Sequence record: NC_061446.1
Strand: one strand, 5' to 3'
DNA: 64,000 nt
Position 1 is the stretch's first letter. Each line of letters starts with the position of its first letter. Positions 9,868 to 62,620 of the stretch are shown one piece after another. A program made the translations under genes and the position numbers. The notes below the pieces were generated by a model that searched no databases, had not been told where the DNA came from, and saw only the letters and a program-made list of their open reading frames with translations.

Positions 9868-9892
9868 AATACCCTCCGTTGTTCATGTCAGG

Positions 9893-9901
9893 TATTTACA
9901 G
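9893..9901 (-). promoter_or_regulatory. Class 1 motif CTGTAAATA
   Basis: Exact copy ~25 nt upstream of the 9867 start. Confidence 0.6.
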
Positions 9902-10246: not shown

Positions 10247-10261
10247 GGTGTTCTCCTATTA

Positions 10262-10633: not shown

Positions 10634-10946
10634 TGCATAGTTCCTTAATGGTGCGTGGGAAGACTGTCACGTTAATGCGCGTGTGATCTTTGTGTTCAGG
10701 ATGCGGTAGACATTCATGAGACACAAGCCAGACGTTCGTGCATTCGAGTTTATCACGCATCACCATTAACAGGTTGGACATGACAGACACGCTATGCACG
10801 AAGTTAGAATAATCGAGAGTGAGGATCATTACTTCACTCGTCGGTTCTTCATCGCCTTGGTTCCACAGGCTAACGTTCATCGACAGGCGGGCTGCTTCAC
10901 TTCTCAACATATCCATATCGAGAGTGTGCGGTAAACGCTCTTTCAT
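10623..10946 (-). CDS. Hypothetical protein
   Basis: 107-aa ORF with AAGGAG RBS. Confidence 0.7.
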   Translation of the reverse strand: MKERLPHTLDMDMLRSEAARLSMNVSLWNQGDEEPTSEVMILTLDYSNFVHSVSVMSNLLMVMRDKLECTNVWLVSHECLPHPEHKDHTRINVTVFPRTIKELCNAS

Positions 10947-11470: not shown

Positions 11471-11975
11471 TATAGTTGACGAGCATACCGATATGATTTG
11501 TAATCATTGTCTTTTGCTCTGAGGTCAGCTCGCTATATGCAGGGATGTTAGGGAACTGACCCTTCATTGCGAGATAGATTGTTTGAATGTTCGGAACTTC
11601 CTGCTCGACTCGACCGCGATGAATAATACAACCGCGATAGATGAATGCAGACGCAGGCAATGAGGGGTTTAGTTGAACAGGATCGACACAATCATAGGCA
11701 ACCAACACAATCGTATTGCCGAACACCTCTTTCAGCATTGATAGAGGCTCGTCTGGGTTCTCACTTTCCAGATCGTATGTCTCATACGTCGCGTCAACGG
11801 TACTTGTCGCAGCACCGCCAATGTTGATGTTCAGGCGTAGGTCCATCTTCGTGTGAACATCACGCATATCGGGATGTGGTGTGAGAATAAAGCCCTTCTC
11901 CTCAAGGGCTTTACGCAGCATTTGGGAAAATTCGATACGGCCCCGTTTATGCTGCGGTGTGTTTTGTAACTGCAT
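11460..11975 (-). CDS. Hypothetical protein
   Basis: 171-aa ORF coupled to the helicase stop (TAATG). Confidence 0.7.
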   Translation of the reverse strand: MQLQNTPQHKRGRIEFSQMLRKALEEKGFILTPHPDMRDVHTKMDLRLNINIGGAATSTVDATYETYDLESENPDEPLSMLKEVFGNTIVLVAYDCVDPVQLNPSLPASAFIYRGCIIHRGRVEQEVPNIQTIYLAMKGQFPNIPAYSELTSEQKTMITNHIGMLVNYIEE

Positions 11976-13576
11976 TAGAATCGCCTCATGCCTAAGTTAG
12001 ATGGCTGGCCTTTCACACGCGCTTCTGGTTCGAAGTAGTCAGGCAGCTCGCTATCAAGCGCTTCACCTCTCGACACAACTCCCATCCAGTCACGCAGCTT
12101 CTTCGGTGTACGTTTAGCTTTCGCGTACCCAAACTTCCAGCACATCTTGAGAACGGAACGAGCACACTGCATCGAGCGGTCCATCTTCGGATCAATGAAC
12201 ATACGAATAACAGGTGTGCGTTTGTTTTCCATTGGCGTCAGAATACGACACGATTCCTGTTTCCAGTTCGGCTCGTTGTTCATCGGCATGATGTAGTACA
12301 GCGTGTCCCACTTAGGAACGTTCAGGCCTCGCTGCATCAGCTTACGCATACCGACAACGCAACGTATCTTACCTTCACGCGCTGCATCAATGATCGGCTT
12401 ACGCTTCTTCGCTTCTTTCGCACCGCCAAGGAACACAGCAGCAACTTCATCCATGTAATGCTCATTGATACGCTGCACCAGACGACGCGCTTGATCAGTG
12501 AACATGATTGGGATTGCGATACTTCGACCGGCATCTAGGTCTTTGATAATCCATTCAAAGATCTTATCGTTGCGGTCTGGATGGTTCGCAAGGAACTTAC
12601 AGAATCGCACCCAACCACTTTTGTTGTTGTAGTTCGCTTTCGACTGCACTCTATTTGAGGTCTTATGCAGAGTTACTTTCGGCACAAGCTCCTCAACAAA
12701 CGCCTCGGCAATCACAGGCCCGAAGATAGATTCAATCAGGTAGTGACGTCCGTCTTTACGTTTAGGAGTTGCAGTCAGGCCGAAGCGATACTTCATTTTC
12801 AGAGAGGCCAGTACGCGGCTGTAGCAGCTTGCGTTACCAGCGTGACATTCATCGACGAACAACGTACCGTAGTTCTCGTTCAGCAACTTGAGTCGCTTCT
12901 TCGAGTTCTTACTATCAGAGATCAAAGACTGATAGGTCACAAGGATGATCTGGAAGTTCTTATAGTCGTCCAGAGTCTTCGGGAATCCATACAGCTTCTT
13001 ACCGTGCTTCTCTTCCAGCTCAGGCAAGTTCGTCATCGCTTCGATAGTCTCTAAGAAACCATCGAGGAAGTCTTTCTGGTCAGCCATAATGACTGTACGG
13101 AAACCAGAGTGACATGCACCAGCAGTACCGATAACTGTCTTACCAGAACGAGGCGGTGCTTTAAACACACCACACAGTTCGCCGAACATCTTCTCGAAAG
13201 GCTCTTCCTGATATTCACGCAGCTTGCCTGTGAACTTCACTTTGTAGTCGTAAGGAACACGCGACGTACCATTAACGAACTTCACTTCTTTCAGGCTTAA
13301 CCCTGCTGTCTTTTCAAAACGGTGCATCTCACCATAAGGAATCGACACGTAACGCTTACCCTTAATGTCAGAGTATTTCGCCAGCACGGTTATATCAAGC
13401 AGACCGCCCTTTGAACACTGGCGGCATTCATCGGACGGTCGTATAGAACGAAACTCACAGTTCTTGCACACGGCATTTTCGAACTCGTAGTGAGTCATCT
13501 TCTTGATGATGTTGTCTGCGTCCACAACCTTAACTGGAATGTGCAGACGGCTATCGACCAATACTTTGGCAGTCAC
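11975..13576 (-). CDS. Superfamily 2 DNA helicase (UvsW-like) with N-terminal Cys cluster
   Basis: Walker A APPRSGKT, DECH box, GLTATP, GLNVP and QESCRILT motifs; CKNC...CRQC near the N-terminus. Confidence 0.88.
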   Translation of the reverse strand: MTAKVLVDSRLHIPVKVVDADNIIKKMTHYEFENAVCKNCEFRSIRPSDECRQCSKGGLLDITVLAKYSDIKGKRYVSIPYGEMHRFEKTAGLSLKEVKFVNGTSRVPYDYKVKFTGKLREYQEEPFEKMFGELCGVFKAPPRSGKTVIGTAGACHSGFRTVIMADQKDFLDGFLETIEAMTNLPELEEKHGKKLYGFPKTLDDYKNFQIILVTYQSLISDSKNSKKRLKLLNENYGTLFVDECHAGNASCYSRVLASLKMKYRFGLTATPKRKDGRHYLIESIFGPVIAEAFVEELVPKVTLHKTSNRVQSKANYNNKSGWVRFCKFLANHPDRNDKIFEWIIKDLDAGRSIAIPIMFTDQARRLVQRINEHYMDEVAAVFLGGAKEAKKRKPIIDAAREGKIRCVVGMRKLMQRGLNVPKWDTLYYIMPMNNEPNWKQESCRILTPMENKRTPVIRMFIDPKMDRSMQCARSVLKMCWKFGYAKAKRTPKKLRDWMGVVSRGEALDSELPDYFEPEARVKGQPSNLGMRRF

Positions 13577-14124: not shown

Positions 14125-14570
14125 TAATCACCTTTGTCAGTTACGAGAATAGGACTCTCAGGAGTCTTGTGCGGCATAGCAAAGAAACTGCCATGCTCGT
14201 CTCGATAAATTAGCAGACCCCCAGAAGGACCTTCGATAGGACAGGTGAAGTTGTATAGTTTTTCGAGCGGAGGCATGTAGCCTACAGTCACTGCGTTAAA
14301 CGTACACCACTTCGCGGAGACTTCAAGCAGTGAGCCAACAACAGTGTCGGCTAGGCGCAGATACGATTGCTTGAAGTGGTAGCTATGTTCTATAGGCGCA
14401 ACGCTATCAATATCCAGCGAGTCACCGTACACAGCTTTATAGATCAGACAGAAACGACGACGCCCACGCGGGGCATTAGGTATTTCATACAGAACATCAT
14501 GTATGAGCGAACAAACGTCCCCAATGAGGACGTTTTTCTTAATAGCCAGTTTGGCCAGACGTGCCGTCAT
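14124..14570 (-). CDS. Hypothetical protein
   Basis: 148-aa ORF translationally coupled on both sides. Confidence 0.7.
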   Translation of the reverse strand: MTARLAKLAIKKNVLIGDVCSLIHDVLYEIPNAPRGRRRFCLIYKAVYGDSLDIDSVAPIEHSYHFKQSYLRLADTVVGSLLEVSAKWCTFNAVTVGYMPPLEKLYNFTCPIEGPSGGLLIYRDEHGSFFAMPHKTPESPILVTDKGD

Positions 14571-15745
14571 GCTGGCAGGTACCCAAAGTACAACAACGTG
14601 TGCGTGTCGAACTTATAGTTCAGACTGAATGCGTTCAGGCTATTGATGTTCGCACCGTGGAAGCCCATGTTGTGTCGTTCTTCACGCCCGATGTTACGCA
14701 GCAACTCACGGATGATACGCATGTCGAGCGAGGTACTAAACTCTTTCTCAACAGGCTTCGCCAGCTTCAAGCTGTCCTGTACGCTGCCGCTATCGTTACC
14801 AAACTTGAGTTTGAACTCCTGCTTCTTAACGAGGAGTTTCGCGTTCGTATTACCCTTCTTCTCAATCAGCGTTGAGATGTTAGCGAACGGAGCAGACAGG
14901 TCACCTTTAATCACACAACCAATCAGCGGCTTACCGAGTTGCGCAATCATGTTGTCCATGTAACGATAGTCTTCATCGCTTGCCTGAATCGGCGGCAGTG
15001 TCAGAACAAACGACTCCGCTTCGGCTGCGAATGAACTGCTGTCTACGTGGAACGTTACCTTCTCTTCACCGCAGAAGCGATAAATCAGATCGAACATTTC
15101 GCCAGTCAGACTGAAACGGAACGGCTTCACTTTCTTTTTCAGTGCAGCGCGATAGCGAGATGAAGTCCAGTGACCAGGACTGACGAGGCTCAGGCTCTCA
15201 CCGTCACAGATAACACGACACATCACGGTCTGGCCCGTGATTGTATCTTTCAACCGAGTCAGCTTAACGCCCTGAGTCATCGCGTCGATAACTTCACGCG
15301 TCATCTCATGGCCACCTTCGATATGGTGATGCAGACCCTGTTCGACCATTGGAATCTGCTCGGCCGATACCGGACGCAGTTTCACTTCTGCTTTGTACTT
15401 GCCTTTCTGTTCGCTGATGTTCAACGTCTTACCGTCGAACTCAACATTTAGCTCTTTACGCTTGCTGATCAGACCGGTCAACTGAATCGGGTCGATGTTC
15501 ATTACCGTGTCAGCGTCGGCGGTCGCGCCAGGAACGAGATAAGCAACGAAGGTATCAGGAGTACGGCCCAGAACGAACACGTCGGACTTATACGTCACCA
15601 GCAGGTGGATGTGAGTCAGCTTGTCGTCCGACTCAGAGAAACGCGTTACGCTATCAACACGTTTAAGAATATCTGACAGGAACGTACCGTTCAGCGTTAG
15701 GCTGCATTTCTTAGCGGGGTTCTTCGGCAATCGACAAGTCTTCAT
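14567..15745 (-). CDS. Putative sliding clamp (DNA polymerase III beta-like)
   Basis: 392 aa (three-domain beta-clamp size), alternating helix/strand pattern, N-terminus LSDILKRVDSV...IHLL, located two genes from the polymerase. Confidence 0.55.
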   Translation of the reverse strand: MKTCRLPKNPAKKCSLTLNGTFLSDILKRVDSVTRFSESDDKLTHIHLLVTYKSDVFVLGRTPDTFVAYLVPGATADADTVMNIDPIQLTGLISKRKELNVEFDGKTLNISEQKGKYKAEVKLRPVSAEQIPMVEQGLHHHIEGGHEMTREVIDAMTQGVKLTRLKDTITGQTVMCRVICDGESLSLVSPGHWTSSRYRAALKKKVKPFRFSLTGEMFDLIYRFCGEEKVTFHVDSSSFAAEAESFVLTLPPIQASDEDYRYMDNMIAQLGKPLIGCVIKGDLSAPFANISTLIEKKGNTNAKLLVKKQEFKLKFGNDSGSVQDSLKLAKPVEKEFSTSLDMRIIRELLRNIGREERHNMGFHGANINSLNAFSLNYKFDTHTLLYFGYLPA

Positions 15746-16004
15746 CTCTATCCTCTAAAACAAATTGTAGTGTGCCCTGTATATTTACAGCATTGAGGCG
15801 CTTGCCGGATGCTGCAATCAGTCCATTCAGAACGCCAACGAAGTCAGCGCTGTAACAGTCAGGTGCTATCTGGTGGACATAAATATCATCAGGCACGTCA
15901 CCTGGGTTAAGCTGCCAAGCAGTACGCAAGGCAGCACCCATGAATGCCGGACGTTCTACCAGATGCTTGTTCAGGAACGAACATATATCTTCGGCCGTCA
16001 TCAT
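15711..16004 (-). CDS. Hypothetical protein
   Basis: 97-aa ORF overlapping the polymerase stop by 4 nt. Confidence 0.6.
   Translation of the reverse strand: MMTAEDICSFLNKHLVERPAFMGAALRTAWQLNPGDVPDDIYVHQIAPDCYSADFVGVLNGLIAASGKRLNAVNIQGTLQFVLEDRDEDLSIAEEPR
15782..15790 (-). promoter_or_regulatory. Class 1 motif CTGTAAATA
   Basis: Exact copy upstream of the clamp gene. Confidence 0.65.
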
Positions 16005-19000
16005 TTCTTCGCAATCCCCTTAAGAGCAGATTTGAGCATGGACTTACTGAGTTTGATTTTCTTCTTAGGCGCAGCGCCCTCTGTAGAGGCAGCGGCTTTC
16101 TTCGCAGCTTCTTCCGCTTTGTACTTCTCGAACGTTTTAATGTTCTTCGGAAGTTCTGCCAGCCACTCCTTGATGTTCTTCTTGTCCTTGTTGGTGAGAG
16201 GATTAACTTTGTCCATGCTACGAATTTTAATATCGTTAGCCCAAAGCTGTTTCTTCATCCAATCGGACATGAGATGATACTGGTCTTCCATAATGCTGTC
16301 CAGTGTCTTCTCAACATCGAGGTCTTTCTCACCCAGCTCGTCACGCTTAATCTCAAGGCCGTCTTTAATGAGCTTCCTGAGTTGAACGTAAGAGAAGTTC
16401 CAACCCTGCACGTCTTTCTCTGACGCACCGATTTCAAAGTCAATCTCAGGTACGGACGTGAACTCAAACCCTTCGTGACGCTTCTGCACAACTTCGACCA
16501 CTGCGCTGGTCATCGCACGTTCGATCATATCGAGCGCAAGGAAGATCCATTTGTAATCGCAGTCAACGGTCAAGGAGTCGTGTACCGATACGTTCATGTC
16601 AAAGTCTGGGTACTCGCCATTCGCTTTCCAATACTCATATTTCATACGATCCAGAATACGAATCGCGGACATCATCAAGTCAGAACCGAAGCCCTGTACC
16701 GGACTGTTTACCGCACGACGGTCACACGCTGCATGAACCATGTTCGCTTCACGATGCGACTCTGGAAGCATCAGGCCCCAGAGGTGACGACGACGACCAA
16801 CTGGTGATTCAACAAAGAAGTTCTCATGTGCAAACTTCTGAATCTTATCGAACCACTTCAAGCCCACAGGGAATCGTTTAAGGAACTTGCTTTTGATTTC
16901 TTCAATCTCACCGACTTCACGTCCAGTTGATTTCGCAAGACCTTTGTTACCCTGCTGATAGATCAGGCCGAAGATTACTGTCTTAACCGCGTTACGTACG
17001 GACTTGGTTACGTCCATTACGTTTGGAATACCGAAGAAGTAAGCGGCGTTGATTTTGTGAACGTCACCCTCAGCTTCGACGCGGTGCTCAATCCACGGAT
17101 CAGGCACAGTACGGAAACGATGACGCAGCTTACGGCCTTGCTCGAATACGTCTGCAACGCCCTGGTCACCTGAGATGATTGACCAACCACGAACTTCGTG
17201 CGCTGAGTAGTCGACCTTGATAAGCAGGCGATTCTTACGCGCAATCAGAATACGTTTGATCAACTTACCCATCTCACTACGAGACGGTACCTGTTGCAAG
17301 TTCGGGTCAGATGCTGAGGTACGACCCGTTACAACTCCAAGATAACCATACGTCGGTCGAATTGAACGGTCATGTTTGAAGTCTTCTGATTCACCCCAGA
17401 GCTTGAGCAGGCTGTTAACGTAGGCGTTCTTGAGCTTGTACGCTTTGCCGAGTTTGGTATACAACGCAACCAAAGGCACATCCTTATACGCCTCCTGGAA
17501 GTCCTTGTCGAGCTTGCCCGCCTTCTTGCCGTTCTCACGTAACTGTTCCCCTTCTTTCAGAGGCTTGAGCTTCATCACATCGAAGAACAGAATCTGTTTG
17601 TGTTCCGACTTCGACATATCGAACTTGGTCACTTCGACTTTGCCCATAAGACCCATCTTAGGAACATTGTCGTCTTTGCAAATAACCTTGTTCGCAGCCT
17701 TAACCTCAGGGCTGTTCATGAACTCACGCTCTACGTTTCGAATTTCTTCGTTGATAGGGCTGTTCGGCAGGTTGAGCTTAAACAGGTAATCAATGTCTGC
17801 GCCTGCGCCTGTCGTTTCAAGAATCGAGAACGCATGAATCTGGTCGGAGATTTGCTCACTAACCATCGACTCATACTTCTTGTATTTAATATCGTTGGCT
17901 CGCTTTTGCTGTTGCTCTGCGATACGGAACGGAACGATAACGTCGAGGCCGGCATACTCCTGCACCGATTCGTCGAGGTCAACGTCTGCGATTGTCGCTC
18001 GCATCTCTTTACCGAACGACACTTCGTGGTACACCTGACAACCAAACTGCATCGTCAGGTTAGCCAAGTTATAATAACCGCTACCGGTAACGTTCAACAA
18101 CGACTTGGCGTTTTCATCGAACGCAAACTCACCCGCTTGAATATCCCAAACGTTTGCTGCATAACTACGGATGCCGAAGTTAGAGCGCATTACGTTCAGG
18201 TCGAACTTCGCGTTGGTATAGATCTGATATTTGTTCTCGTTGTCCTCGAAGTAATCTTTGAACAACTCACTTACCTTGCGTAGTTCTTTCGGACTGAATG
18301 GACTATCGCGGTGATAGATAGGGACAACATACGCTTTCTGACCGTCGGAAGATAACTGCACCGTCAAGATTTTATTCTTGATACGATTCAGGTTCTCTGT
18401 TTCGGTATCGACTGCAACCTTCTTGGCGCGCTTCATACGCTTCAAGATTTTCTCAAGTTGCTTGACCTTCGTTACATACACGAGGTCCCAGTTACGCTTC
18501 TTACCACACGTAACTTCATCGATCTTATAGCGCATACCCTTGTTAAGCCACGGCAACATCCAGCGAGCCATGTAACCTAACGTGTACGATGAACCTTTGA
18601 TGTGCATCGGGTTCAACACGGTGTGATAGCTGACGTTCGGCACATGGATAAAGCTGTGCTTCTTACCGTCATGCTTGAGCTTCGTTGGAATCTCAACACC
18701 GTACCAGTGCTCGTAATGATCTTTCGAGAACTGTATCTTCTCGCTGTTCAGTGCTTTGAACGGCGCTTTACCGAAGGTCAGAACATAGTCTGGCTTGTAC
18801 TCAACAATCAAATCACGAATACGATCCGCAAACGCTTGGTCTGCGTCTTCTTTGAACTGCTCGCCCTTGTCATACGTCTTGAACATGTTGTACGAGACAA
18901 CAAGGAAGTTCCAGTCGTCAAGAGTTGTCTTGGTCGGAAACGTATCTTCGAGATACTGCATCTGATTCAGGAACAACTCACCTTCCGTGCTACTGAATAT

Positions 19001-19171
19001 CTTGCCGCTACGCAAGTCTTCGGTAGGCATGTGATCGAGGACGAGAAGTGCTTTACCACCTTTGGCACTTTTACTTATGCCTTTTAGTATTCGAACACCG
19101 TCATACGTCTGCTGGTCAGCAAACTGTTCAGGTGGATCGAAGTCAAGAGCTACGTGCTTGATTTTCACCAT
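16001..19171 (-). CDS. polA: Family A DNA polymerase: UDG-like N-terminal domain, 3'-5' exonuclease, polymerase
   Basis: Exo I VAVDTETE, Exo II NAKFD, TGRTSASDPNLQQVP, motif A DYSAHE, motif B KTVIFGLIY, motif C VHDS. Confidence 0.95.
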   Translation of the reverse strand: MVKIKHVALDFDPPEQFADQQTYDGVRILKGISKSAKGGKALLVLDHMPTEDLRSGKIFSSTEGELFLNQMQYLEDTFPTKTTLDDWNFLVVSYNMFKTYDKGEQFKEDADQAFADRIRDLIVEYKPDYVLTFGKAPFKALNSEKIQFSKDHYEHWYGVEIPTKLKHDGKKHSFIHVPNVSYHTVLNPMHIKGSSYTLGYMARWMLPWLNKGMRYKIDEVTCGKKRNWDLVYVTKVKQLEKILKRMKRAKKVAVDTETENLNRIKNKILTVQLSSDGQKAYVVPIYHRDSPFSPKELRKVSELFKDYFEDNENKYQIYTNAKFDLNVMRSNFGIRSYAANVWDIQAGEFAFDENAKSLLNVTGSGYYNLANLTMQFGCQVYHEVSFGKEMRATIADVDLDESVQEYAGLDVIVPFRIAEQQQKRANDIKYKKYESMVSEQISDQIHAFSILETTGAGADIDYLFKLNLPNSPINEEIRNVEREFMNSPEVKAANKVICKDDNVPKMGLMGKVEVTKFDMSKSEHKQILFFDVMKLKPLKEGEQLRENGKKAGKLDKDFQEAYKDVPLVALYTKLGKAYKLKNAYVNSLLKLWGESEDFKHDRSIRPTYGYLGVVTGRTSASDPNLQQVPSRSEMGKLIKRILIARKNRLLIKVDYSAHEVRGWSIISGDQGVADVFEQGRKLRHRFRTVPDPWIEHRVEAEGDVHKINAAYFFGIPNVMDVTKSVRNAVKTVIFGLIYQQGNKGLAKSTGREVGEIEEIKSKFLKRFPVGLKWFDKIQKFAHENFFVESPVGRRRHLWGLMLPESHREANMVHAACDRRAVNSPVQGFGSDLMMSAIRILDRMKYEYWKANGEYPDFDMNVSVHDSLTVDCDYKWIFLALDMIERAMTSAVVEVVQKRHEGFEFTSVPEIDFEIGASEKDVQGWNFSYVQLRKLIKDGLEIKRDELGEKDLDVEKTLDSIMEDQYHLMSDWMKKQLWANDIKIRSMDKVNPLTNKDKKNIKEWLAELPKNIKTFEKYKAEEAAKKAAASTEGAAPKKKIKLSKSMLKSALKGIAKK

Positions 19172-43133: not shown

Positions 43134-43457
43134 TTACTCCACCGTATTAAGGGCTTGTGCCGTGTACTCACGCAGAGTACGTTCGATGTTTGAGGCCAGC
43201 GTCGGGTGACAGATAAGCTGGTGGTCTTTCATGTACACACGCAGCGAAGGACGCATCACCCTGCGAACCTGTGGATAGATACCGAAGATTTTATGCAGAG
43301 GAGTCTTGTAGTAAAACTCCTCCTGCTCGTCCATGCAGTTAATGTTTGCCACAACTTCGTACTTGGCAAAGATAGCTGGATTGCGATTGATATACGCAGG
43401 TTCAATCGGCACACTGCCTTTCTCGTGATCGCTATTTAACTGACCGAAGATCATCAC
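43134..43457 (-). CDS. Hypothetical protein
   Basis: 107-aa ORF overlapping the SbcC stop by 4 nt. Confidence 0.65.
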   Translation of the reverse strand: MMIFGQLNSDHEKGSVPIEPAYINRNPAIFAKYEVVANINCMDEQEEFYYKTPLHKIFGIYPQVRRVMRPSLRVYMKDHQLICHPTLASNIERTLREYTAQALNTVE

Positions 43458-45784
43458 ATTACCTTACGCGTTAACTTAGACACACCACCTTGCTTGGTGA
43501 TAGTCCATTGGTTGTCAGAGAAGTGCTCAACGTCCAGAGGGGTAATCCAGTAGACGTTAGGAATGATTTGCTTGAGAATCGGTAGGAAGTTCTTCACGAT
43601 ATGATCGCGTGTCGCATCACTACAGGAGTTCTCAGGTTCATCGAGCACAATAAAGTTTGTACGTCGATTAGCAGGAATGAATGGCATGATCGCTACAGCA
43701 AACAGCAGACGGAAACAGTTTGTCTCTGCACCACTCATGATTGCAATGTCCGTTGTCTTCTTCGACACCAGACGGGTAACGGTTGCACCAACACCCTGCT
43801 TGGTAGTAAACAGTTCGAAGTGCATCGGCTCAGGGAACACCAGACCAGAGTATTCGTTCAGCTTCTTCTCAATCTGTTTGATACGGCCTTCAACCGCTTT
43901 CAGTTTAAGAGCATTGTTGCTGTATGCCTTATACAGGACTTCGAATACTTTGCGCTTGTCGATCAGCGGTTGCAGGTCTGCGAGCTTGCTGCGAAGTTCA
44001 CGTAACGTTTCTTCGTAGTGTTCGTGCTCCTGAATGCGCATCTGGATGTTCTGTGCCTTACGCTCCTTCTTCTCAATGTCTGCGATCAGCTTTTCAACTT
44101 CGGCGCTAACCTTTTTGTACTCACCGTCGATCAGATAGAACTCACGGTCAGGCTTACCAACGCCTTTGATTGCAGCACGAAGGTCTTTCAGAATCTCAAG
44201 GTCCTTGATTCGGTTCTTGATTGTCTTACGGGCTTTCTTAGGCTGCTTAACCGCTTTAGGCTTCTTGAGAGCATCACGCTTGGCCACCAGCTTCTCGTAC
44301 TTCTTCGCTGTCTCGAACTGTTCTTCGATTTCATCCAGCTTAGTGCCGATTGCCTTGAGTTGCTTTTCAAGGTCTTTGCGTTTATGCTTCGGCTTCTTGA
44401 CCTTCTCTGCCTGCAATTCAGTGAGCTGGTCATTCAGCTTGTAGTAGTCAAGAGCTTCGATACACTCGTCAATGATCGACTGAGCTTTCGTTGCAGCGCG
44501 GGCCATAGCTTTCAGGTCAACATCTTGTCCACAGGTAGGGCATGAGTTGCCGTCGTGATCGTGTTCCTGAAACGCACGATACGCCTGAACTATTGCTTTG
44601 GATTCTGCGCGGGCATCTTGTGCCTCTTCCTGAGTTCGTTTAGGAGCTTTGAGCTTAGACAGCTTTTTACTGAGCTTGTCCACGGCTTCTCGCCAGTCGT
44701 CGTACTCTTCCTGTTGTTCATCGACTTTCTCCAGTAACGCTTCGAGGCTCTCTTCCTCTTTTACCAGTGCTCCGTGCTTCTTACGCAGCTTCTTGTTGTC
44801 AAGCGCCGCAACGTCACCGAGTGCTTTGATTTTCTTTTTGACTTCGGATAGCTCGGTCTGATATTCGTCCAGTGCTTCCACAAAGTCATCGTAACGGTCA
44901 TGCTCGATCAACAGACCACGTAAGGTATTCAGTTCACCTTTGAGGTCGTCCGTCTCGATGCCTAACGTGTCGAGTTCATGCTTGAGCTTCTCATACTTCT
45001 TCGCGGTTGTGCGCTGAGTACCGAGTTCAATCAGGAGTTCCGACAGTTCGTTACGTTTGGCCTTCATCTTATCCGACTGCTTGATGATTGCAGCCAGCGT
45101 GTTCTTTTCTTCGGCGTGAATAGACAGCGCGTTTTGTTTACGCTGAGTAACGTCCAGCATGTCCGCCAGACCTTTAGATTCTGTCTCGGCATCTTTAGCC
45201 AAGTCCAGTTTCTTCTTCAACGCCGCACGGATGTTATCGAACACATCCAGATTGAATAACGAGGTCAGGTACTTTAAACGATCAGCAGGTTGCGCACGTT
45301 GGAAGGGATGCGGTATCTGCGACTGAATGTAGGCATAGCTGTAGAACTCGTCTTTCGACAACGGCCAATGCTTTGAGATCCACGAACGCGCTACGTCCTG
45401 ACGACCGACCTTCTGGTCTTCACCGTTGTAGTAAACTTTATAGCTCTTGGCTGTTTGCTCGATACGAACAATACCGCCCAACGGAGATTCCCATGACAGA
45501 TCGATAACGCTGCCCTTACTGAGCATGTTACCCTTGTCTTTCTTTTTCAGAGCAAGAGGGTCAGCTTCGTAGAGCAGCGTAGGTATTGCACCGAACAGGA
45601 GACTTTTGCCTACGCCGTTCGTATTGTCTTTAACGTTTGGACTGTCGAGGTTTCTGCCGCAGATAGTTGCGAAGCCTTCACTGTCCAATGTGTCAATATC
45701 AAGTTCTTTGTACACGCCAACATCGCGGAGATGAATCTCTTTTAATCCGATGCCGTGGTTCTGCTTTTGCTTCGCTTTGGCCAT
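43454..45784 (-). CDS. sbcC: SbcC/Rad50-like ATPase
   Basis: Walker A NGVGKS, long coiled coil, Zn hook CPTCGQ, signature MSGAE, Walker B IVLDE. Confidence 0.9.
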   Translation of the reverse strand: MAKAKQKQNHGIGLKEIHLRDVGVYKELDIDTLDSEGFATICGRNLDSPNVKDNTNGVGKSLLFGAIPTLLYEADPLALKKKDKGNMLSKGSVIDLSWESPLGGIVRIEQTAKSYKVYYNGEDQKVGRQDVARSWISKHWPLSKDEFYSYAYIQSQIPHPFQRAQPADRLKYLTSLFNLDVFDNIRAALKKKLDLAKDAETESKGLADMLDVTQRKQNALSIHAEEKNTLAAIIKQSDKMKAKRNELSELLIELGTQRTTAKKYEKLKHELDTLGIETDDLKGELNTLRGLLIEHDRYDDFVEALDEYQTELSEVKKKIKALGDVAALDNKKLRKKHGALVKEEESLEALLEKVDEQQEEYDDWREAVDKLSKKLSKLKAPKRTQEEAQDARAESKAIVQAYRAFQEHDHDGNSCPTCGQDVDLKAMARAATKAQSIIDECIEALDYYKLNDQLTELQAEKVKKPKHKRKDLEKQLKAIGTKLDEIEEQFETAKKYEKLVAKRDALKKPKAVKQPKKARKTIKNRIKDLEILKDLRAAIKGVGKPDREFYLIDGEYKKVSAEVEKLIADIEKKERKAQNIQMRIQEHEHYEETLRELRSKLADLQPLIDKRKVFEVLYKAYSNNALKLKAVEGRIKQIEKKLNEYSGLVFPEPMHFELFTTKQGVGATVTRLVSKKTTDIAIMSGAETNCFRLLFAVAIMPFIPANRRTNFIVLDEPENSCSDATRDHIVKNFLPILKQIIPNVYWITPLDVEHFSDNQWTITKQGGVSKLTRKVM

Positions 45785-52835: not shown

Positions 52836-53303
52836 TCAATCGGGTTTTTCAAGTTGCCTGTGAATGAAGTACATCATATCGTCATCTTCATCCTCCGGCT
52901 CGTAAAGATCTAGCTTTGGAAAATTCCAAGCGACCTCTACTTCATATCGCCTAAGTGCGAACATTATCGCTGCATCAATTTCTTGATAAACGCATTCGAA
53001 AGGCTTTAAGTAAGGATAGGACAGGCATAAAGTTTTTATTGGCTCAGGCGGGCAAGTCTTCAACCACGGAACTATCTCAGCAAGAGATTTCTCCAGCAGT
53101 TCTTTACTTCCGTACTTAGGCCAGTCCTCAAGAAGAAGTTTGGTTATGTACTTCTTTCGATTCTTAGCGAGTGCCGCATATTCCCGAGTAAGAAATTTCT
53201 CAACGCCTTTCTCTGGAACAGTTTGTTTCTTTGCGGCTAGAACGATTTCAAGTTTGACCGCTATGCGCAATCGAGCCAACTGACTGCATTTAACTTTCGG
53301 CAT
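52836..53303 (-). CDS. Hypothetical protein coupled to the Pol-like gene
   Basis: 155 aa, TAATG overlap with 53303-54952. Confidence 0.65.
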   Translation of the reverse strand: MPKVKCSQLARLRIAVKLEIVLAAKKQTVPEKGVEKFLTREYAALAKNRKKYITKLLLEDWPKYGSKELLEKSLAEIVPWLKTCPPEPIKTLCLSYPYLKPFECVYQEIDAAIMFALRRYEVEVAWNFPKLDLYEPEDEDDDMMYFIHRQLEKPD

Positions 53304-54952
53304 TAATCATCACCCATAAAATCAAGGGTATCAGAGAATTTCTTAATGATGAACTTCGCCTTAGCCGACTGGACGTCACCCTTAGATTTCATTAGGGCGC
53401 CATCGTGTTCAAGCGAGTAAACGATTTCAACATTACCACTTAGAATCGCCTCAAACAAATGATTCGATTCAATGCCAGATATGCAATGACTCATGGTTCG
53501 TCGTCGCACCTTACGAGACGAGATACATTGGTCATGTTCGAGAACATACTTGGCTCCAGTATCGCACGTCAGCAACATTCCTTCGGACGTATAGCGGAAT
53601 CGCTTGGAATAAATATCACATAGTCTCTGTAGCGCTTCGATGAAATGCTTGCAGTCTATGTTCCACGACTCCACAAAGTCGTAGACCTCACTCAGATTTT
53701 TAAAGTGAGGTCTAAGCGCCATCACAGCACTCGCCCTAGGGCTTTTCGCCAACCTGTCCGCACTGAACAGCGTTCCATAAAAACAAATTTTCACCAGCTT
53801 CTTCGATAGGCGAGTGTTGTTTGGGTTAGCTTGTTGGAGTTTATCTACAATGTCATTTACAGAATGTACATCGTCAAGGAAGCTGCACTCGATGCCGTTG
53901 TCTGCAAACTCCTTACGGATGATGTTGAGCTGACTGCTCTCCATATCCCAGTTATCGCCAACAACACTACATGCCTGTTTAAGAACGGCAGGGAATGATT
54001 GGAACCCACCACCCTGTTCGAACAGACGCCCACCGACTCGCGCAATTGTATACGCTGGGTAGTATCTGATTATCAGAGGTTCCTCGGACACGATCTGAAT
54101 CGGTCCCGAAAGAATCGCCTGTAGACAACTCATTACCTGATGATATTGTTTTAAGGCCTTTCGTGTCCCTCTGAAACTCTTAACAGTCAGATAATCGAGA
54201 ATGGGGTCGATAGCAATTTCGTTTGGCCCTATCTTCTTCAACACCGCATTATAGAGCTTACGCGCAGCACGATCCCGATTAGAGTTCAGTCCGTATTTTG
54301 CGTTGCCTCCGGACAGGTCATGCTTTCGAGGCTTGAAAGGTTTGTTAGCACTCGCGCTGATCATATCCATAATCGTTTGACCGAATCGTTCTTGAACCGC
54401 CTTCAATGGACTATAGAGTCTCGTTAGCTCAAGAATTTCACGACTGGACTTAGGGCGATTCGGGTACATCGCGTCTAAGTGCTTTCGCTTGATGCGGAAC
54501 TCTCGACAACGACCAGGCGATCCCGGCGTTTTCTTTTTATACTTCTTGTAGTCCATTACATTAGCGATAAGCCACTCAAGGGCTCGGCTGAAATGTTTTT
54601 CAGTTCGTTCCCATTTTGGACCTACTGGACCACGTAACTTATTTTCGCACCCGAATACCATCGGAAGCTCTTTGACTCCAAGTTTTCTGCTGAACGGCAC
54701 CCACACGGTACCAAACTTTTCAAACTTCTTTCTTTTTGTCGGATAAAGCGAGGATTGAAGCACATGCCAGAAAAATAGATTGATCTGACGGCGAAACTCG
54801 GCTTCATGCTTCGCTGGACCGTCATACGGGCATTTCTCAACAACATTATCCCTCACCCACACCAGAGGTTCTAGCTCTTGGTGAGTGGGATTTCGCGTCA
54901 AGACCGCTTTGCCCTTTTTCATAAAAGAAGACATTCGAATCTCCTGAATCAC
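53303..54952 (-). CDS. Divergent family A / TV-Pol-like polymerase-fold protein
   Basis: GGRL..FQSFP, NWDMESSQ, VKICFYGTLF, ISGIES and LEHDG occur in PolA motif order; no exonuclease motifs seen. Confidence 0.6.
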   Translation of the reverse strand: MIQEIRMSSFMKKGKAVLTRNPTHQELEPLVWVRDNVVEKCPYDGPAKHEAEFRRQINLFFWHVLQSSLYPTKRKKFEKFGTVWVPFSRKLGVKELPMVFGCENKLRGPVGPKWERTEKHFSRALEWLIANVMDYKKYKKKTPGSPGRCREFRIKRKHLDAMYPNRPKSSREILELTRLYSPLKAVQERFGQTIMDMISASANKPFKPRKHDLSGGNAKYGLNSNRDRAARKLYNAVLKKIGPNEIAIDPILDYLTVKSFRGTRKALKQYHQVMSCLQAILSGPIQIVSEEPLIIRYYPAYTIARVGGRLFEQGGGFQSFPAVLKQACSVVGDNWDMESSQLNIIRKEFADNGIECSFLDDVHSVNDIVDKLQQANPNNTRLSKKLVKICFYGTLFSADRLAKSPRASAVMALRPHFKNLSEVYDFVESWNIDCKHFIEALQRLCDIYSKRFRYTSEGMLLTCDTGAKYVLEHDQCISSRKVRRRTMSHCISGIESNHLFEAILSGNVEIVYSLEHDGALMKSKGDVQSAKAKFIIKKFSDTLDFMGDD

Positions 54953-54976
54953 TTCTTTTCTTCGTTTTCTTCTTGT

Positions 54977-54985
54977 TGTTTACAG
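54977..54985 (-). promoter_or_regulatory. Class 1 variant CTGTAAACA
   Basis: Upstream of the Pol-like gene. Confidence 0.5.
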
Positions 54986-55120
54986 AAACCTCTTGCTTTG
55001 CAAGGCGATACAAGGCAGGTAGAAGAACAAGCAACGCTGGGCGATCGAGCGGCGCGCTCAAGGCACGGGATATACGGATATACATGAGGGCTTTAGGCGC
55101 ACTCCGTTTTTGAGCCACCA

Positions 55121-55327
55121 AAAAGGAAGAACCACACCCTCATACGTTAAAACCCATGTCCTATACGCTTAAACATATACCCAGGAGCGATCACAATTTT
55201 CAAAAAGATCTACCCGAAACCATGTAAATTTTTTTCAAATTTGGAGAGATTTCTGTCCATTTTTCACCCAATGGGTCAAAAACAGAGGAAAAACCCGAAT
55301 AAAATCAAGGACTTTTCCTCTTCTGCA
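55121..55327. other. AT-rich non-coding tract (possible origin or promoter region)
   Basis: Hand count 65/180 G+C (36%) over 55141-55320; A/T tracts; imperfect repeats ATACGTTAAAAC / ATACGCTTAAAC. Confidence 0.4.
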
Positions 55328-61561: not shown

Positions 61562-62620
61562 CTACTTTCCTTTCTTCTCTATTGCCTTTGGTCTATTCCA
61601 CCCAAGTTCTTTCGCTGGCATGATGCACTTCTTACCGTGAATATCACGCAGCGTCATACGAACTTCTTTGATCAACTTGAATGGTGCGTTGTCGGGGTCG
61701 AGCTTAATCAGCTTACCGTCTTCATCAAACTCACGAGGTAGTTTAAAGTGCTTGACCGGTACTGGTGAGTTACGTTCAAATTCATCTTTGATCTTTGTGC
61801 GCAACAACTTCCCACCACCATCGTTATCTGTCATCGTATAGACAACACTCACGCCAAGCATTTCAATCGTTCTGCGTTTCGTTTCACCAAACTGCTCTGC
61901 ACCGAGAACAGCCAGCGCTGGTATTCCGTATGACAGGAGAGCCAGAGCATCTCGCGGCCCTTCGACAAGAACGATGTATCGCAACTTGTACTTCTTCAAA
62001 CACTCTTTCACAAGCGGCAGAGGGAACAGGCCTTTGTCTTTTGCCCAATCGCCTTGCGAGTTCACATAGCTGGTGCCGTTCATTTGCTTACGCAGATAAG
62101 CTGCAATCCCACCTATGTATTTCGTTCCATGCTTACACGGAAAGAAACAAACGTTTGTGCCTGTGTGCTGTGCATTAAGCAAACCACCAGCAGCACGAAC
62201 AAGCGCACCCGGATAGCCACGCCACTCAACATCGAGCGGCCACTCCATGTATGACTTACGTCCGAGTGCTTTCATCAACAGACCGACAGACGGATAAGTA
62301 CCAATCTTCGAGCCAATCTGATCATACGTTTTAAGCAATGCACTGAGCGAGTTCGTTCCTGCGTCTTTTAACGCCCAGCCTTTGATCTCTTGCAGTCGAG
62401 CATGAGCCGCTAATTTGTTCCAGCCGCCCTTCTCGCCGCAGCCGAAGCAGTGAAAGAATCCGAGTGGTATCTCCATGCCTACAGAAGTGTAAATACCACA
62501 ACTAGGAGTCTTATCACTGTGGAACGGACAGCACACCATAACAGTGTCGCCGTTATATTTCTTCTCGCCCGGCAGTTTACCTATTTCGTCAAGAATTATC
62601 TGATGAACGTCTTCTGCCAT
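61562..62620 (-). CDS. dnaG: DnaG-type DNA primase
   Basis: CHC2 finger CCPFHSDKTPSC...CFGCG; TOPRIM LVEGPRDAL and TDNDGGG. Confidence 0.9.
   Translation of the reverse strand: MAEDVHQIILDEIGKLPGEKKYNGDTVMVCCPFHSDKTPSCGIYTSVGMEIPLGFFHCFGCGEKGGWNKLAAHARLQEIKGWALKDAGTNSLSALLKTYDQIGSKIGTYPSVGLLMKALGRKSYMEWPLDVEWRGYPGALVRAAGGLLNAQHTGTNVCFFPCKHGTKYIGGIAAYLRKQMNGTSYVNSQGDWAKDKGLFPLPLVKECLKKYKLRYIVLVEGPRDALALLSYGIPALAVLGAEQFGETKRRTIEMLGVSVVYTMTDNDGGGKLLRTKIKDEFERNSPVPVKHFKLPREFDEDGKLIKLDPDNAPFKLIKEVRMTLRDIHGKKCIMPAKELGWNRPKAIEKKGK

What the first reader, a model, noticed from the sequence alone, without database searches (positions are those of the whole stretch)
52836..54952. Second, exonuclease-less family A / TV-Pol-like polymerase
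Seen in correct order and spacing: GGRLFEQGGGFQSFP (cf. TGRTSASDPNLQQVP in this phage's PolA), motif A NWDMESSQ (Asp at 53945-47), motif B KLVKICFYGTLF (cf. KTVIFGLIY), MSHCISGIES (cf. VNSPVQGFGS) and motif C LEHDG (Asp at 53402-04). Both catalytic Asp positions are kept. The N-terminal ~280 aa is basic and unassigned, and a 155-aa partner is coupled by TAATG. Established: TV-Pol is a transposon/virus family related to PolA and T7-type RNA polymerases, proposed to act as primase-polymerases. Inference: because the phage already has PolA and DnaG, this enzyme may do something else, such as origin priming, dedicated transcription, or templated synthesis from an RNA such as the 49240 element (speculative).
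Basis: partly seen in the sequence, partly recalled or inferred. Interest (0 to 1): 0.8.

Follow-up and report, generated by a model that had tools for sequence, protein, structure and literature searches.

The report
Swappable extra DNA polymerase cassette
This jumbo phage of the fire-blight bacterium carries, besides its normal replication machinery, a second proofreading-less DNA polymerase of the little-studied 'TV-Pol' family with a small coupled partner protein, and the pair is exchanged as a unit between otherwise near-identical phages.

Summary
The window is Erwinia phage pEa_SNUABM_30. gp211 (53303..54934, minus strand, 543 aa) and gp210 (155 aa, start overlapping as TAATG) are real genes under purifying selection, both annotated 'hypothetical'.

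The AlphaFold model matches only family A DNA polymerases in the PDB (56 hits, E down to 4e-5). Sequence profiles alone do not reach PolA. They do reach the transposase-adjacent polymerase of Microcystis phage Ma-LMM01 (134 bits) and relatives next to resolvases, integrases and transposases. So this is a TV-Pol of the subclass with an N-terminal domain.

The phage also has PolA, a DnaG-type primase, clamp, clamp loader and helicases, so this enzyme is extra. The partner is an orphan all-alpha protein, not an OB-fold SSB like MP of CcPol-MP.

New here: leader, pol and partner form a ~2.44-kb cassette replaced in situ. Backbone proteins are 99% identical where pol is 46%, with recurrent boundaries and discordant trees.

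Most likely it is a primase-polymerase auxiliary to the replisome. No structured RNA or Rfam match supports RNA-templated synthesis.

The parts
53303..54934 (-). gp211, TV-Pol-family polymerase (543 aa; ATG start at 54934, stop at 53303-53305)
   Evidence: ORF. Deposited CDS. PHROG 30690, E = 2.7e-100. AF2 pLDDT 82. Foldseek hits to family A DNA polymerases. TV-Pol profile link. dN/dS 0.03-0.07.
54275..54934 (-). N-terminal basic domain (residues 1-~220), shared with the N-domain subclass of TV-Pol; function unknown, possibly nucleic-acid binding
   Evidence: pI 10.2. Lower-confidence mixed alpha/beta model. The A2 profile alignment to Ma-LMM01 gp030 covers profile positions 6-376, which includes this domain.
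54110..54271 (-). Thumb-like helical segment (residues ~222-275)
   Evidence: Helices 222-232, 242-254 and 258-275 in the model, pLDDT >90. Assigned by position only; coordinates were not inspected.
53990..54052 (-). Beta-hairpin with invariant R303 and the GGGFQ..P loop (equivalent of TGRLSS..PNLQN.P in Pol I)
   Evidence: Invariant in A1 and A2. Strands 295-297 and 304-306. Paired with TGRTSA..P.LQQ.P of the phage PolA in hhalign.
53924..53959 (-). Motif A (N328-W-D330-M-E-S-S-Q335); catalytic Asp D330 at 53945-53947
   Evidence: D330 invariant in 78 sequences. Strand 327-331. Coordinates verified.
53762..53803 (-). Motif B / O-helix equivalent (K378..K382..Y386..F390)
   Evidence: K382 invariant. 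Helix 378-391. Aligned K-to-K with Pol gamma and with the phage PolA.
53459..53494 (-). 'QG' motif equivalent (H483..S-G487-I-E489)
   Evidence: G487 and E489 invariant. Paired with VQG.GS of PolA.
53390..53422 (-). Motif C (S-L-E-H510-D511-G512); catalytic Asp D511 at 53402-53404
   Evidence: D511 and G512 invariant. Beta-hairpin 502-508 / 512-517. Coordinates verified.
52836..53303 (-). gp210, translationally coupled 155-aa partner; orphan all-alpha protein
   Evidence: TAATG overlap. Only 7 homologue clusters. AF2 pLDDT 80.8, seven helices. No PDB fold match. dN/dS 0.04-0.14.
54935..55283 (-). Cassette-specific non-coding leader/promoter region that is swapped together with pol and partner
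   Evidence: Homology to the 97%-identical backbone of L012 stops at 55285. Unalignable between cassette types apart from two motifs. No unusual RNA folding and no Rfam hit.
55221..55233 (-). A-tract + TTTACAYGG element, conserved upstream of nearly all cassette types; function unknown (promoter or recognition site)
   Evidence: Unique in 164 kb of this genome. Present 290-410 nt upstream of pol in 17 of 18 jumbo-phage loci and absent upstream of mobile-element relatives.
54979..54986 (-). TCTGTAAA promoter-like motif 45 nt upstream of the pol start, shared with replication genes
   Evidence: 10 sites against 2.3 expected; none of 100 shuffles reaches 10. Also precedes PolA, clamp loader, exonuclease and the DnaG-type primase.
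55284..55321 (-). Terminator-like hairpin after gp212; marks the upstream boundary of the cassette (belongs to the conserved backbone)
   Evidence: 9-bp stem AGAGGAAAA/TTTTCCTCT followed by GTTTTTG, read. The boundary of backbone homology falls here.

Best explanation
gp211 is a catalytically intact, proofreading-less DNA polymerase of the TV-Pol family. It consists of an N-terminal basic domain, a short thumb, an Arg hairpin, and a palm with fingers inserted.

It is made from its own transcription unit together with a translationally coupled, fast-evolving all-alpha partner (gp210). The unit carries the same TCTGTAAA promoter-like motif as the phage's PolA, clamp loader and DnaG genes, so it is probably expressed with the replication genes.

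By analogy with CcPol-MP, the only characterised TV-Pol, the pair most likely acts as a DNA-dependent primase-polymerase. The partner would enable or target primer-independent DNA synthesis, for instance start or restart of synthesis at particular sites, as an auxiliary to the PolA/DnaG/DnaB replisome.

The leader-pol-partner unit is a discrete ~2.44-kb cassette that related jumbo phages exchange by recombination in the conserved flanks. This is probably driven by selection to escape something that targets it, or by incompatibility between co-infecting phages.

Shown: the gene pair, conservation, fold, family membership, presence of a conventional replisome, and cassette swapping. Inferred: DNA (not RNA) synthesis, priming, the partner's role, and the selective cause of swapping.
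For: Fold. The AF2 model has pLDDT 82, and >90 over residues 220-530. All of the top-50 listed PDB hits (56 reach E <= 1e-3) are family A DNA polymerases: apPOL 3.8e-5, Taq, Pol theta, Klenow, Bst. Viral hits include virophage and NCLDV helicase/primase/polymerase proteins.

Family. 382 clusters at E <= 1e-3. Invariant R303, D330, K382, G487, E489, D511, G512. Ma-LMM01 gp030, next to IS605-type transposases, scores 134 bits on A2 and 20 bits on A1. Relatives sit beside a resolvase, integrases and an ISNCY transposase, as described for TV-Pol (PMC2579912).

Functionality. dN/dS is 0.03-0.07 for pol and 0.04-0.14 for the partner.

DNAP-like motif positions. Tyr at K+4, Phe at K+8, Gln at D+5.

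Co-regulation. The TCTGTAAA motif precedes PolA, clamp loader, exonuclease, DnaG and this gene.

Precedent. CcPol needs its small partner MP to prime DNA de novo with dNTPs (PMC7581432).

Cassette. Flanks are 96.7-97.2% identical up to 55285 and from 52840, while pol is 44-46% identical. Backbone/pol identities are 99/46, 97/46, 94/41 and 97/47%, and the trees are discordant. The same boundaries recur in independent pairs. A partner ORF follows pol in every cassette type.
Against: - No biochemical data exist for this clade.
- The partner is all-alpha with no fold match, so the MP/SSB mechanism cannot simply be transferred.
- No helicase gene is adjacent, unlike most TV-Pol and CcPol contexts.
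- The phage already has a DnaG-type primase, so a second primase is not obviously needed.
- Sequence-only comparisons with PolA are not significant: hhalign E = 0.43 and 0.058, and the PDB HMM search gave nothing significant.
- The RxxxK motif of the original TV-Pol description is KxxxK here and variable across the family.
- No origin, iteron array or structured RNA could be demonstrated in the leader.
- Pol and partner are sometimes exchanged separately: WIN-L005 has pol at 89% and the partner at ~47%. This argues against strict pairwise co-specificity.
Confidence: 0.55

Rival explanations
1. Repair, translesion or gap-filling DNA polymerase, functionally like Pol theta or Pol nu. It would be an exonuclease-less family A enzyme that extends existing 3' ends at damaged or broken phage DNA, with the partner as an accessory factor. 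It would have no priming activity.
For: Pol theta and Pol nu are among the best structural matches. There is no exonuclease domain. The phage has a separate replicative PolA and primase. Yutin et al. proposed repair as one option for their extra PolA, divPolA2 (PMC11348598). One distant member lies between a UvrD-type helicase and an RNase H gene.
Against: This does not explain the obligatory, fast-evolving coupled partner, the repeated in-situ swapping, or the family's prevalence as the apparently sole polymerase in small integrative or transposable elements. The N-terminal domain has no counterpart in repair polymerases.
Confidence: 0.18
2. The cassette makes a product other than the phage genome. 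This could be a short or protein-linked DNA primed on the partner, or a decoy or signalling nucleic acid. It would act in counter-defence or in competition between phages, which would explain the arms-race-like turnover.
For: Hypervariable, horizontally exchanged cassette in a near-identical backbone. Orphan partner with an invariant Tyr42 and an invariant C-terminal Asp. The fingers subdomain, which binds substrate and template, is the most divergent part at 18-43% identity. A unique conserved cis element lies in the leader. Yutin et al. attribute DNAP swapping to avoidance of host defences or to replicon incompatibility.
Against: Entirely indirect. There is no PADLOC hit and no structured RNA or Rfam hit in the leader. 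No similarity to terminal proteins or known anti-defence proteins was found. Selection within cassette types is purifying rather than diversifying.
Confidence: 0.12
3. A resident selfish element. The pair would be the remnant of a TV-Pol mobile element that persists and spreads among co-infecting jumbo phages by recombination, without serving the phage.
For: TV-Pols are typical of transposons and integrative elements (PMC2579912). The cassette phylogeny is discordant with the backbone.
Against: The cassette has no integrase, transposase or nuclease. It occupies the same locus in every member of the group, including phages whose backbone proteins are only ~57-62% identical. It is under strong purifying selection and carries the phage's own replication-gene promoter motif. 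No empty site was seen among 18 loci.
Confidence: 0.08
4. A T7/N4-like single-subunit RNA polymerase dedicated to a small set of phage promoters, for example the conserved TTTACAYGG element.
For: TV-Pol is related to both PolA and T7-like RNAPs (PMC2579912). Motif C is HDG, not HDE. One phage RNAP appears weakly in the viral fold search (rank 47, E = 8e-3). A unique conserved upstream element exists. Yutin et al. raise the RNAP option for divPolA2.
Against: None of the top 50 PDB matches is an RNAP. The protein is too small for the T7 RNAP N-terminal and specificity-loop apparatus. Position K+8 is Phe rather than the Tyr that reads the ribose 2'-OH in T7 RNAP, and D+5 is Gln rather than Gly (numbering from established Klenow/T7 literature). 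CcPol prefers dNTPs (PMC7581432). The putative promoter occurs only once in 164 kb. The group uses a phage sigma factor with the host RNAP (PMC7412058).
Confidence: 0.05

Closest known systems
TV-Pol family (Iyer, Abhiman & Aravind 2008, PMC2579912), N-terminal-domain subclass
   Same: Minimal family A core without any nuclease: thumb, Arg hairpin, two catalytic Asp, fingers Lys. It shares the N-terminal globular domain, shows profile-level homology to the Ma-LMM01 member, and its relatives sit next to resolvases, integrases and transposases.
   Different: Here it sits in a 260-kb phage with a complete replisome. It has no recombinase or D5 helicase neighbour and occupies a fixed locus with phage-type promoter motifs. 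The RxxxK Arg is Lys here and variable across the family. The N-domain model is mixed alpha/beta rather than all-helical.
CcPol-MP primase-polymerase of SCCmec and the PolA-SSB pairs of Bacillota elements (PMC7581432, PMC10061031)
   Same: A TV-Pol-class exonuclease-less PolA with a small protein encoded immediately downstream in the same operon. In CcPol-MP the partner confers de novo DNA priming with dNTPs.
   Different: MP is a beta-rich OB-fold ssDNA binder, whereas gp210 is all-alpha with no fold match. CcPol lacks the N-terminal TV-Pol domain, which gp211 has. There is no adjacent helicase here, and no activity data.
divPolA2 and in-situ DNA polymerase swapping in Caudoviricetes (Yutin et al. 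2024, PMC11348598)
   Same: An extra, divergent, exonuclease-less PolA with an unknown N-terminal domain, encoded alongside the main replicative polymerase. The polymerase gene is the only strongly divergent region between close relatives.
   Different: The divPolA2 reference protein is not matched by this family's profiles (3.3 bits). The swaps Yutin et al. describe concern the main replicative DNAP between families A, B and C. Here an accessory TV-Pol is swapped together with its partner and leader, within one family.
Canonical family A DNA polymerases (Pol I/Klenow, Taq, T7 DNAP, Pol theta/nu; Pfam PF00476)
   Same: Same fold, and the same order of motifs pre-A, A, B, 'QG' and C. The catalytic Asp pair and the O-helix Lys are present.
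   Different: There is no Pfam PF00476 match and no significant profile-profile score. There is no 3'-5' exonuclease domain. Motif C is HDG, the thumb is short, and there is an unrelated N-terminal domain.
T7-like single-subunit RNA polymerases
   Same: Same palm/fingers superfamily. Motif C lacks the Glu of DNAPs.
   Different: No RNAP-specific N-terminal domain or specificity loop is evident. The residues at the sugar-selecting positions are DNAP-like. RNAPs are not among the top structural matches.

Membership tests
TV-Pol (Iyer 2008) | Profile-level sequence homology to a founding member | tested here: met
   Ma-LMM01 gp030 scores 134 bits (domain E = 6e-42) on A2 and 20.4 bits on the jumbo-phage-only profile A1. 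It is the only matching ORF in the first 50 kb of the phage named in the paper, and it lies next to an IS605-type transposase pair. The paper's text does not give the gene number, so identifying gp030 as 'the' TV-Pol is inferred from context.
TV-Pol (Iyer 2008) | [quoted passage not shown] | tested here: met
   R303 is invariant in 78 sequences and lies between strands 295-297 and 304-306.
TV-Pol (Iyer 2008) | RRM-like palm with two conserved metal-binding Asp | tested here: met
   D330 and D511 are invariant. The palm matches family A polymerases.
TV-Pol (Iyer 2008) | Fingers module with an RxxxK motif | tested here: inconclusive
   K382 is invariant. Position -4 is Lys378 in this protein and variable across the family, and it is Val in Ma-LMM01 gp030 itself.
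TV-Pol (Iyer 2008) | Thumb centred on two antiparallel helices | tested here: inconclusive
   Helices 242-254 and 258-275 precede the hairpin in the model. Their geometry could not be inspected.
TV-Pol (Iyer 2008) | Never fused or linked to a nuclease domain | tested here: met
   No exonuclease domain: none of the 25 homologues carries any Pfam domain, whereas the phage PolA homologues carry PF01612. The neighbouring genes are not nucleases.
TV-Pol (Iyer 2008) | Context with a D5-like helicase, or with a resolvase, integrase or transposase | tested here: not met
   Not met for the window gene: its neighbours are conserved phage genes with no recombinase or D5 helicase. Met for distant members of the same profile family. 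This is a typical context, not a structural requirement.
Canonical family A DNA polymerase (Pfam PF00476) | Significant match to the family sequence model | tested here: not met
   No Pfam domain on any homologue. hhalign against the phage's own PolA gives E = 0.43, and against a PolA alignment E = 0.058. The profile search against PDB sequences is not significant.
Canonical family A DNA polymerase (Pfam PF00476) | Right-hand fold with motifs A, B and C in order | tested here: met
   Foldseek probability 1.00 to apPOL, Taq, Pol theta, Klenow and Bst. Motif pairing is collinear.
CcPol-MP / PolA-SSB primases | Small partner encoded immediately downstream in the same operon | tested here: met
   TAATG overlap. 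A coupled partner follows pol in every cassette type.
CcPol-MP / PolA-SSB primases | Partner has an OB fold and binds ssDNA | tested here: not met
   The partner model consists of seven helices, pLDDT 80.8, with no PDB fold match.
CcPol-MP / PolA-SSB primases | Primer-independent DNA synthesis that depends on the partner | not testable with these tools
   Requires biochemistry.
T7-like single-subunit RNA polymerase | Closest structural relatives are RNAPs; Tyr at K+8 and Gly at D+5 | tested here: not met
   The top 50 PDB hits are all DNA polymerases. F390 is at K+8 and Q335 at D+5. The residue equivalences rest on motif alignment and established Klenow/T7 numbering.
divPolA2 (Yutin 2024) | Sequence-profile match to the reference protein AUR84708 | tested here: not met
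   3.3 bits. Only the GGR..QNLP..YD stretch aligns.

The most novel reading that the evidence does not exclude
The leader-pol-partner cassette is a self-contained specificity module. One version is a primase-polymerase that, with its cognate partner, starts DNA synthesis at a cognate site in or near its own leader. Different cassette types would then define replication 'incompatibility groups' among co-infecting jumbo phages. The other version is that it synthesises a non-genomic, possibly protein-primed DNA used in counter-defence. Either would be a new role for a family A polymerase in a large phage, and would explain why it is swapped between 97-99% identical backbones.
Probability: 0.15. 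Interest if true: 0.85.

Novelty: new variant of a known kind. Interest (0 to 1): 0.58.

Why it matters
TV-Pols are a widespread but almost unstudied branch of family A polymerases. This profile alone finds 382 clusters, none of which matched a functionally annotated family in the libraries searched. Only one member, CcPol-MP, has been characterised biochemically.

This case shows a TV-Pol domesticated at a fixed locus in a whole group of jumbo phages that already have a full replisome. It is paired with a different kind of partner (all-alpha rather than OB fold) and is exchanged as a promoter-to-stop cassette between near-identical genomes. That gives three things:
- a tractable system for asking what an accessory primase-polymerase does in a large virus;
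- natural 'allele swaps' for testing pol-partner-site specificity;
- a second, independent example of the in-situ polymerase swapping recently described for replicative DNAPs, which bears on whether defence avoidance or replicon incompatibility drives it.

Practically, it also fixes several 'hypothetical protein' annotations in a family of fire-blight biocontrol phages.

Tried and rejected
- **Sequence libraries:** NCBIfam, PADLOC and a direct PDB sequence search of gp211 and gp210 gave nothing meaningful.
- **PolA by sequence:** hhalign of the family against the phage's own PolA, and against a 25-sequence PolA alignment, was not significant (E = 0.43 and 0.058), although collinear. The A2 profile against PDB sequences gave only Pol gamma motif B at E = 2.
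- **Structured RNA in the leader:** rejected. z = -0.74 and no Rfam hit.
- **Iterons in the leader:** only 2-3-copy short repeats, which differ between cassette types, and they are not statistically established. The sigma-70 promoter and terminator scans were at chance level.
- **Partner related to the TV-Pol N-terminal domain:** rejected (hhalign probability <= 1%).
- **Partner as an OB-fold SSB:** rejected.
- **Partner types t2 and t4 homologous to t1/t3:** not detectable.
- **Same family as divPolA2:** rejected at HMM level.
- **TTTACAYGG element upstream of mobile-element TV-Pols:** absent.
- **L021 as a circular-genome assembly artefact:** corrected. The two 7.87-kb copies differ at 2.9% of positions.
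- **Database scans that failed:** The search for related loci failed with the broad alignments because no stretch was conserved enough. P0064 had no close relative in GTDB genomes.
- **Virion proteomics for related phages:** none found in the accessible papers, so a packaged enzyme can be neither supported nor excluded.
- **Paralogues:** a second copy was sought in 164 kb of the genome and none was found.
Full report
**Source and gene models.** The window is bases 124001-188000 of Erwinia phage pEa_SNUABM_30 (NC_061446.1, 259,771 bp, genus Alexandravirus), a jumbo phage of the Y3/Alexandra/AD1 'hairy myovirus' group. The finding corresponds to gp211 and gp210, both deposited as 'hypothetical protein'. 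The ATG at 54934 has an AGGAG Shine-Dalgarno 7 nt upstream and is the deposited start, so the protein is 543 aa. The 155-aa partner (52836..53303) starts within the pol stop codon as TAATG.

The two Asp codons are at the stated coordinates, and the N-terminal 280 aa has pI 10.2.
- An exhaustive profile search of 1.84 billion representatives found 382 clusters at E <= 1e-3 and 132 at E <= 1e-10. Most are 450-600 aa proteins sharing the C-terminal ~250 residues.
- Across 78 of them, down to 15-20% identity, R303, D330, K382, G487, E489, D511 and G512 are invariant.
- The family-wide pattern is GR..E.GGG.Q / NYD..SSQ / WK...Y....G / LQG.E / NEHDG.
- None of those tested carries a functional annotation. 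The 25 close homologues have no Pfam domain, NCBIfam gives nothing, and PHROGs 30690 and 34692 are 'unknown function'.

**Fold.** AlphaFold2 on the 20-sequence alignment gave mean pLDDT 82, and >90 over residues ~220-530.
- Foldseek against the PDB gave 56 hits at E <= 1e-3. All 50 listed are family A DNA polymerases: apicoplast apPOL 3.8e-5, Taq, Pol theta, Klenow, Bst, Pol nu and Mycobacterium Pol1. Probability is 1.00 over ~300-390 aligned columns.
- Against predicted viral structures, its own family comes first (Dickeya JA phages, Yoloswag). Next comes a mixture of phage PolAs and virophage/NCLDV 'replication' or 'helicase/primase/polymerase' proteins: Pyramimonas orientalis virus 8.9e-7, Zamilon 2.5e-5, Qinghai Lake virophage 6.5e-4. 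That is the class Iyer et al. called TV-Pol.
- Sequence alone does not reach PolA. hhalign of the family against the phage's own PolA gave E = 0.43, and against a 25-sequence PolA alignment E = 0.058. The family HMM against all PDB sequences gave only Pol gamma motif B at E = 2.
- Those sub-threshold alignments are nevertheless collinear. They pair GR..E.GGG.Q with TGRTSA..P.LQQ.P, K...Y with K...F, LQG.E with VQG.GS, and EHDG with VHDS.

**Family membership.** Iyer, Abhiman and Aravind (PMC2579912) define TV-Pol as follows:
- a minimal family A core, with a thumb of two antiparallel helices, an Arg hairpin, a two-Asp palm and fingers carrying RxxxK;
- never linked to nucleases;
- either fused or linked to D5-like helicases, or carrying an uncharacterised N-terminal domain and lying next to resolvases, integrases or transposases.

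The paper names Microcystis phage Ma-LMM01 as a host of such an element. I fetched its first 50 kb and scanned all ORFs. Only gp030, which lies next to an IS605-type transposase pair, matched: 134 bits (domain E = 6e-42) on the broad profile, covering profile positions 6-376 and hence the N-terminal domain, and 20 bits on the jumbo-phage-only profile.

Distant members retrieved by my profile sit in the contexts the paper describes:
- 10 nt downstream of a PF00239 resolvase in an integrase-bearing island;
- with an excisionase-like HTH, a Y1 transposase and an integrase;
- in a 7.87-kb integrase-bearing unit present as two tandem 97%-identical copies, where a 120-aa gene overlaps the pol stop;
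- directly after an ISNCY transposase in the Desulfosarcina widdelii chromosome.

I therefore file gp211 as a TV-Pol of the N-terminal-domain subclass, with two caveats. The Arg of RxxxK is Lys378 here, is variable across the family, and is Val in Ma-LMM01 gp030 itself. The window gene has no recombinase or helicase neighbour.

It is not the 'divPolA2' of Yutin et al. 2024, an architecturally similar extra PolA. That paper's reference protein scores 3.3 bits against my profiles.

**An extra enzyme.** The phage has a canonical UDG-exo-PolA (gp170, E = 7e-34 to Klenow, Pfam PF01612+PF00476 on its homologues). It also has a DnaG-type primase (gp220), a sliding clamp (gp168), a helicase (gp165), an SbcC-like protein (gp197), a clamp loader (gp202) and a DnaB-like helicase (gp001). 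This agrees with the description of the PaBG group (PMC7412058), which mentions no second polymerase. The PolA domain is 83-86% identical between this phage and Yoloswag, JA13 and fHe-Yen9-02. The TV-Pol in those same phages is about 15%, 36% and 43-44% identical.

**The partner.** A coupled ORF follows pol in every relative, but it falls into at least four types: 155-172 aa, ~165 aa, 174 aa, and 356-390 aa in Dickeya JA phages.
- Types 1 and 3 share a weak full-length profile match (E = 0.008), a C-terminal ..E[IL][DE]R.L.K.D motif, and invariant R13, A15, E19, Y42, W61 and terminal Asp. The other types are not detectably related.
- The window's partner has only 7 homologue clusters among 5.8 billion proteins.
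- Its model (pLDDT 80.8, pTM 0.78) is seven helices with no PDB match; the best is E = 3. It is unrelated to the pol N-terminal domain.
- It is therefore not an OB-fold ssDNA binder like MP of CcPol-MP (PMC7581432, PMC10061031).
- Both genes are under purifying selection within types: dN/dS 0.03-0.07 for pol and 0.04-0.14 for the partner.

**The cassette.** This is the unexpected result.
- In IMG/VR contigs L012/L013 the eight flanking genes are 95-100% identical to the window's, yet pol is 44% identical and the partner is undetectable.
- At the DNA level the backbone is 96.7% identical down to window 55285, the 3' end of a terminator-like hairpin after gp212. It is 97.2% identical from 52840, the partner's stop codon. 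The 2.44 kb in between is replaced.
- Conversely, pEa_SNUABM_17 has an 84% backbone but a 94-95% identical cassette.
- Backbone-versus-pol protein identities are 99/46 (WIN-L012), 97/46 (L004-L014), 94/41 (L014-L015) and 97/47 (L019-L020).
- In the backbone tree WIN pairs with L012/L013 (support 1.00). In the pol tree it pairs with L004/L005/L006 (0.997-1.00).
- Independent pairs reuse the same two boundaries. In the Dickeya pair the downstream breakpoint lies inside the longer partner ORF.
- The cassette is itself mosaic. WIN-L005 has pol at 89% but the partner at ~47%. WIN-L004 has dS of 1.16 in pol and 0.26 in the partner.
- Divergence between types is spread over the whole protein. It is greatest in the fingers (18-43%) and least around the Arg hairpin and motif A (49-70%).

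**The leader.** The ~350-nt non-coding region that travels with the cassette is unalignable between types except for two elements.
- TCTGTAAA lies ~45 nt upstream of the start. The motif has 10 sites in the window against 2.3 expected, and none of 100 shuffles reaches 10. It lies 9-45 nt upstream of gp159 (exonuclease), gp170 (PolA), gp202 (clamp loader), gp220 (DnaG-type primase) and a few others. This suggests co-expression with replication genes.
- An A-tract followed by TTTACAYGG lies ~290-410 nt upstream of pol. It occurs once in 164 kb of this genome, is conserved in 17 of 18 jumbo-phage loci across all cassette types, and is absent upstream of mobile-element relatives. Its function is unknown.
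- The leader is not unusually structured (z = -0.74), has no Rfam match, and contains only 2-3-copy short repeats.

**Mechanism.**
- Shown: an intact polymerase active site in a family A fold without proofreading, TV-Pol membership, a coupled but non-SSB partner, a complete separate replisome, and repeated in-situ exchange of the transcription unit.
- Inferred: DNA rather than RNA synthesis. The basis is that DNA polymerases are the only top structural matches. In addition, Tyr at K+4 and Phe at K+8 follow the DNAP pattern, and Gln occupies the Klenow E710 / T7 RNAP G542 position. These equivalences come from motif alignment and the established literature. CcPol also prefers dNTPs.
- Inferred by analogy: partner-dependent de novo priming, as in CcPol-MP.
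- Why a phage with DnaG keeps such an enzyme, and why it is swapped, remains open. Yutin et al. propose avoidance of host defences or replicon incompatibility for swaps of replicative DNAPs, and either could apply here.
- Rivals: a repair or translesion polymerase, a producer of a non-genomic product, a resident selfish element, and an RNA polymerase. They are ranked in the report sections.

**Verdict.** This is a new variant of a known but barely characterised kind. The cassette behaviour and the novel partner make it worth experimental follow-up, although the function is still inferred.

Noticed in passing
window 9895, 19213, 28550, 35923, 36463, 48849, 54979, 58128(+), 62662: TCTGTAAA(TA) is enriched (10 sites against 2.3 expected). 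It lies 9-45 nt upstream of start codons, often after terminator-like hairpins. It precedes PolA, the clamp loader, the small exonuclease gene, the DnaG-type primase, the TV-Pol and a few unknown genes. It is probably a phage promoter element of the replication-gene class.
   Followed up: partly
window 16001-19171 (-), 61562-62620 (-), 14567-15745 (-), 11975-13576 (-), 43454-45784 (-), 5331-7007 (-): Several 'hypothetical proteins' in the deposited record can be assigned. gp170 is PolA (Klenow E = 7e-34, motif C HDS). gp220 is a DnaG-type primase, gp168 a sliding clamp, gp165 a helicase, gp197 SbcC-like and gp155 a tail sheath protein.
   Followed up: partly
NC_061446.1 16007-16189 (outside the window; L028): gp023 is annotated 'DNA primase' but is only 60 aa. 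It cannot be a complete primase. The real DnaG-type gene is gp220.
   Followed up: no
L021 1-13987: Two tandem 7.87-kb units, 97% identical. Each carries a phage integrase, an RHH protein, a TV-Pol (P0100), an overlapping 120-aa downstream gene and a 442-aa protein with a weak terminase-like hit. This looks like a small integrative or satellite-like element whose only recognisable polymerase is the TV-Pol.
   Followed up: partly
L024 588-7684; L025: TV-Pol P0064 starts 10 nt after a PF00239 serine resolvase. It is flanked by an OLD-family ATPase/TOPRIM nuclease and an HNH-type endonuclease, in an island with a phage integrase. This is a defence-island-like setting.
   Followed up: no
L016-L020 about 9650-10850: In Dickeya JA-type phages the gene after pol is 356-390 aa, with a Lys-rich variable N-terminus and a conserved C-terminal two-thirds. 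The swap breakpoint between L019 and L020 falls inside it.
   Followed up: no
window 55221-55233 (-): The A-tract + TTTACAYGG element is unique in 164 kb of the genome, yet it is conserved upstream of nearly every cassette type although the surrounding sequence is unalignable. No sigma-70-like -10 follows at the right spacing.
   Followed up: partly
I did not analyse it further.
   Followed up: no
L003 6066-15474: A distant family member (P0059, 680 aa) on a 185-kb phage-like contig lies between a UvrD-type helicase and an RNase H gene. This is a replication/repair-type neighbourhood, different from both the jumbo-phage and the mobile-element contexts.
   Followed up: no
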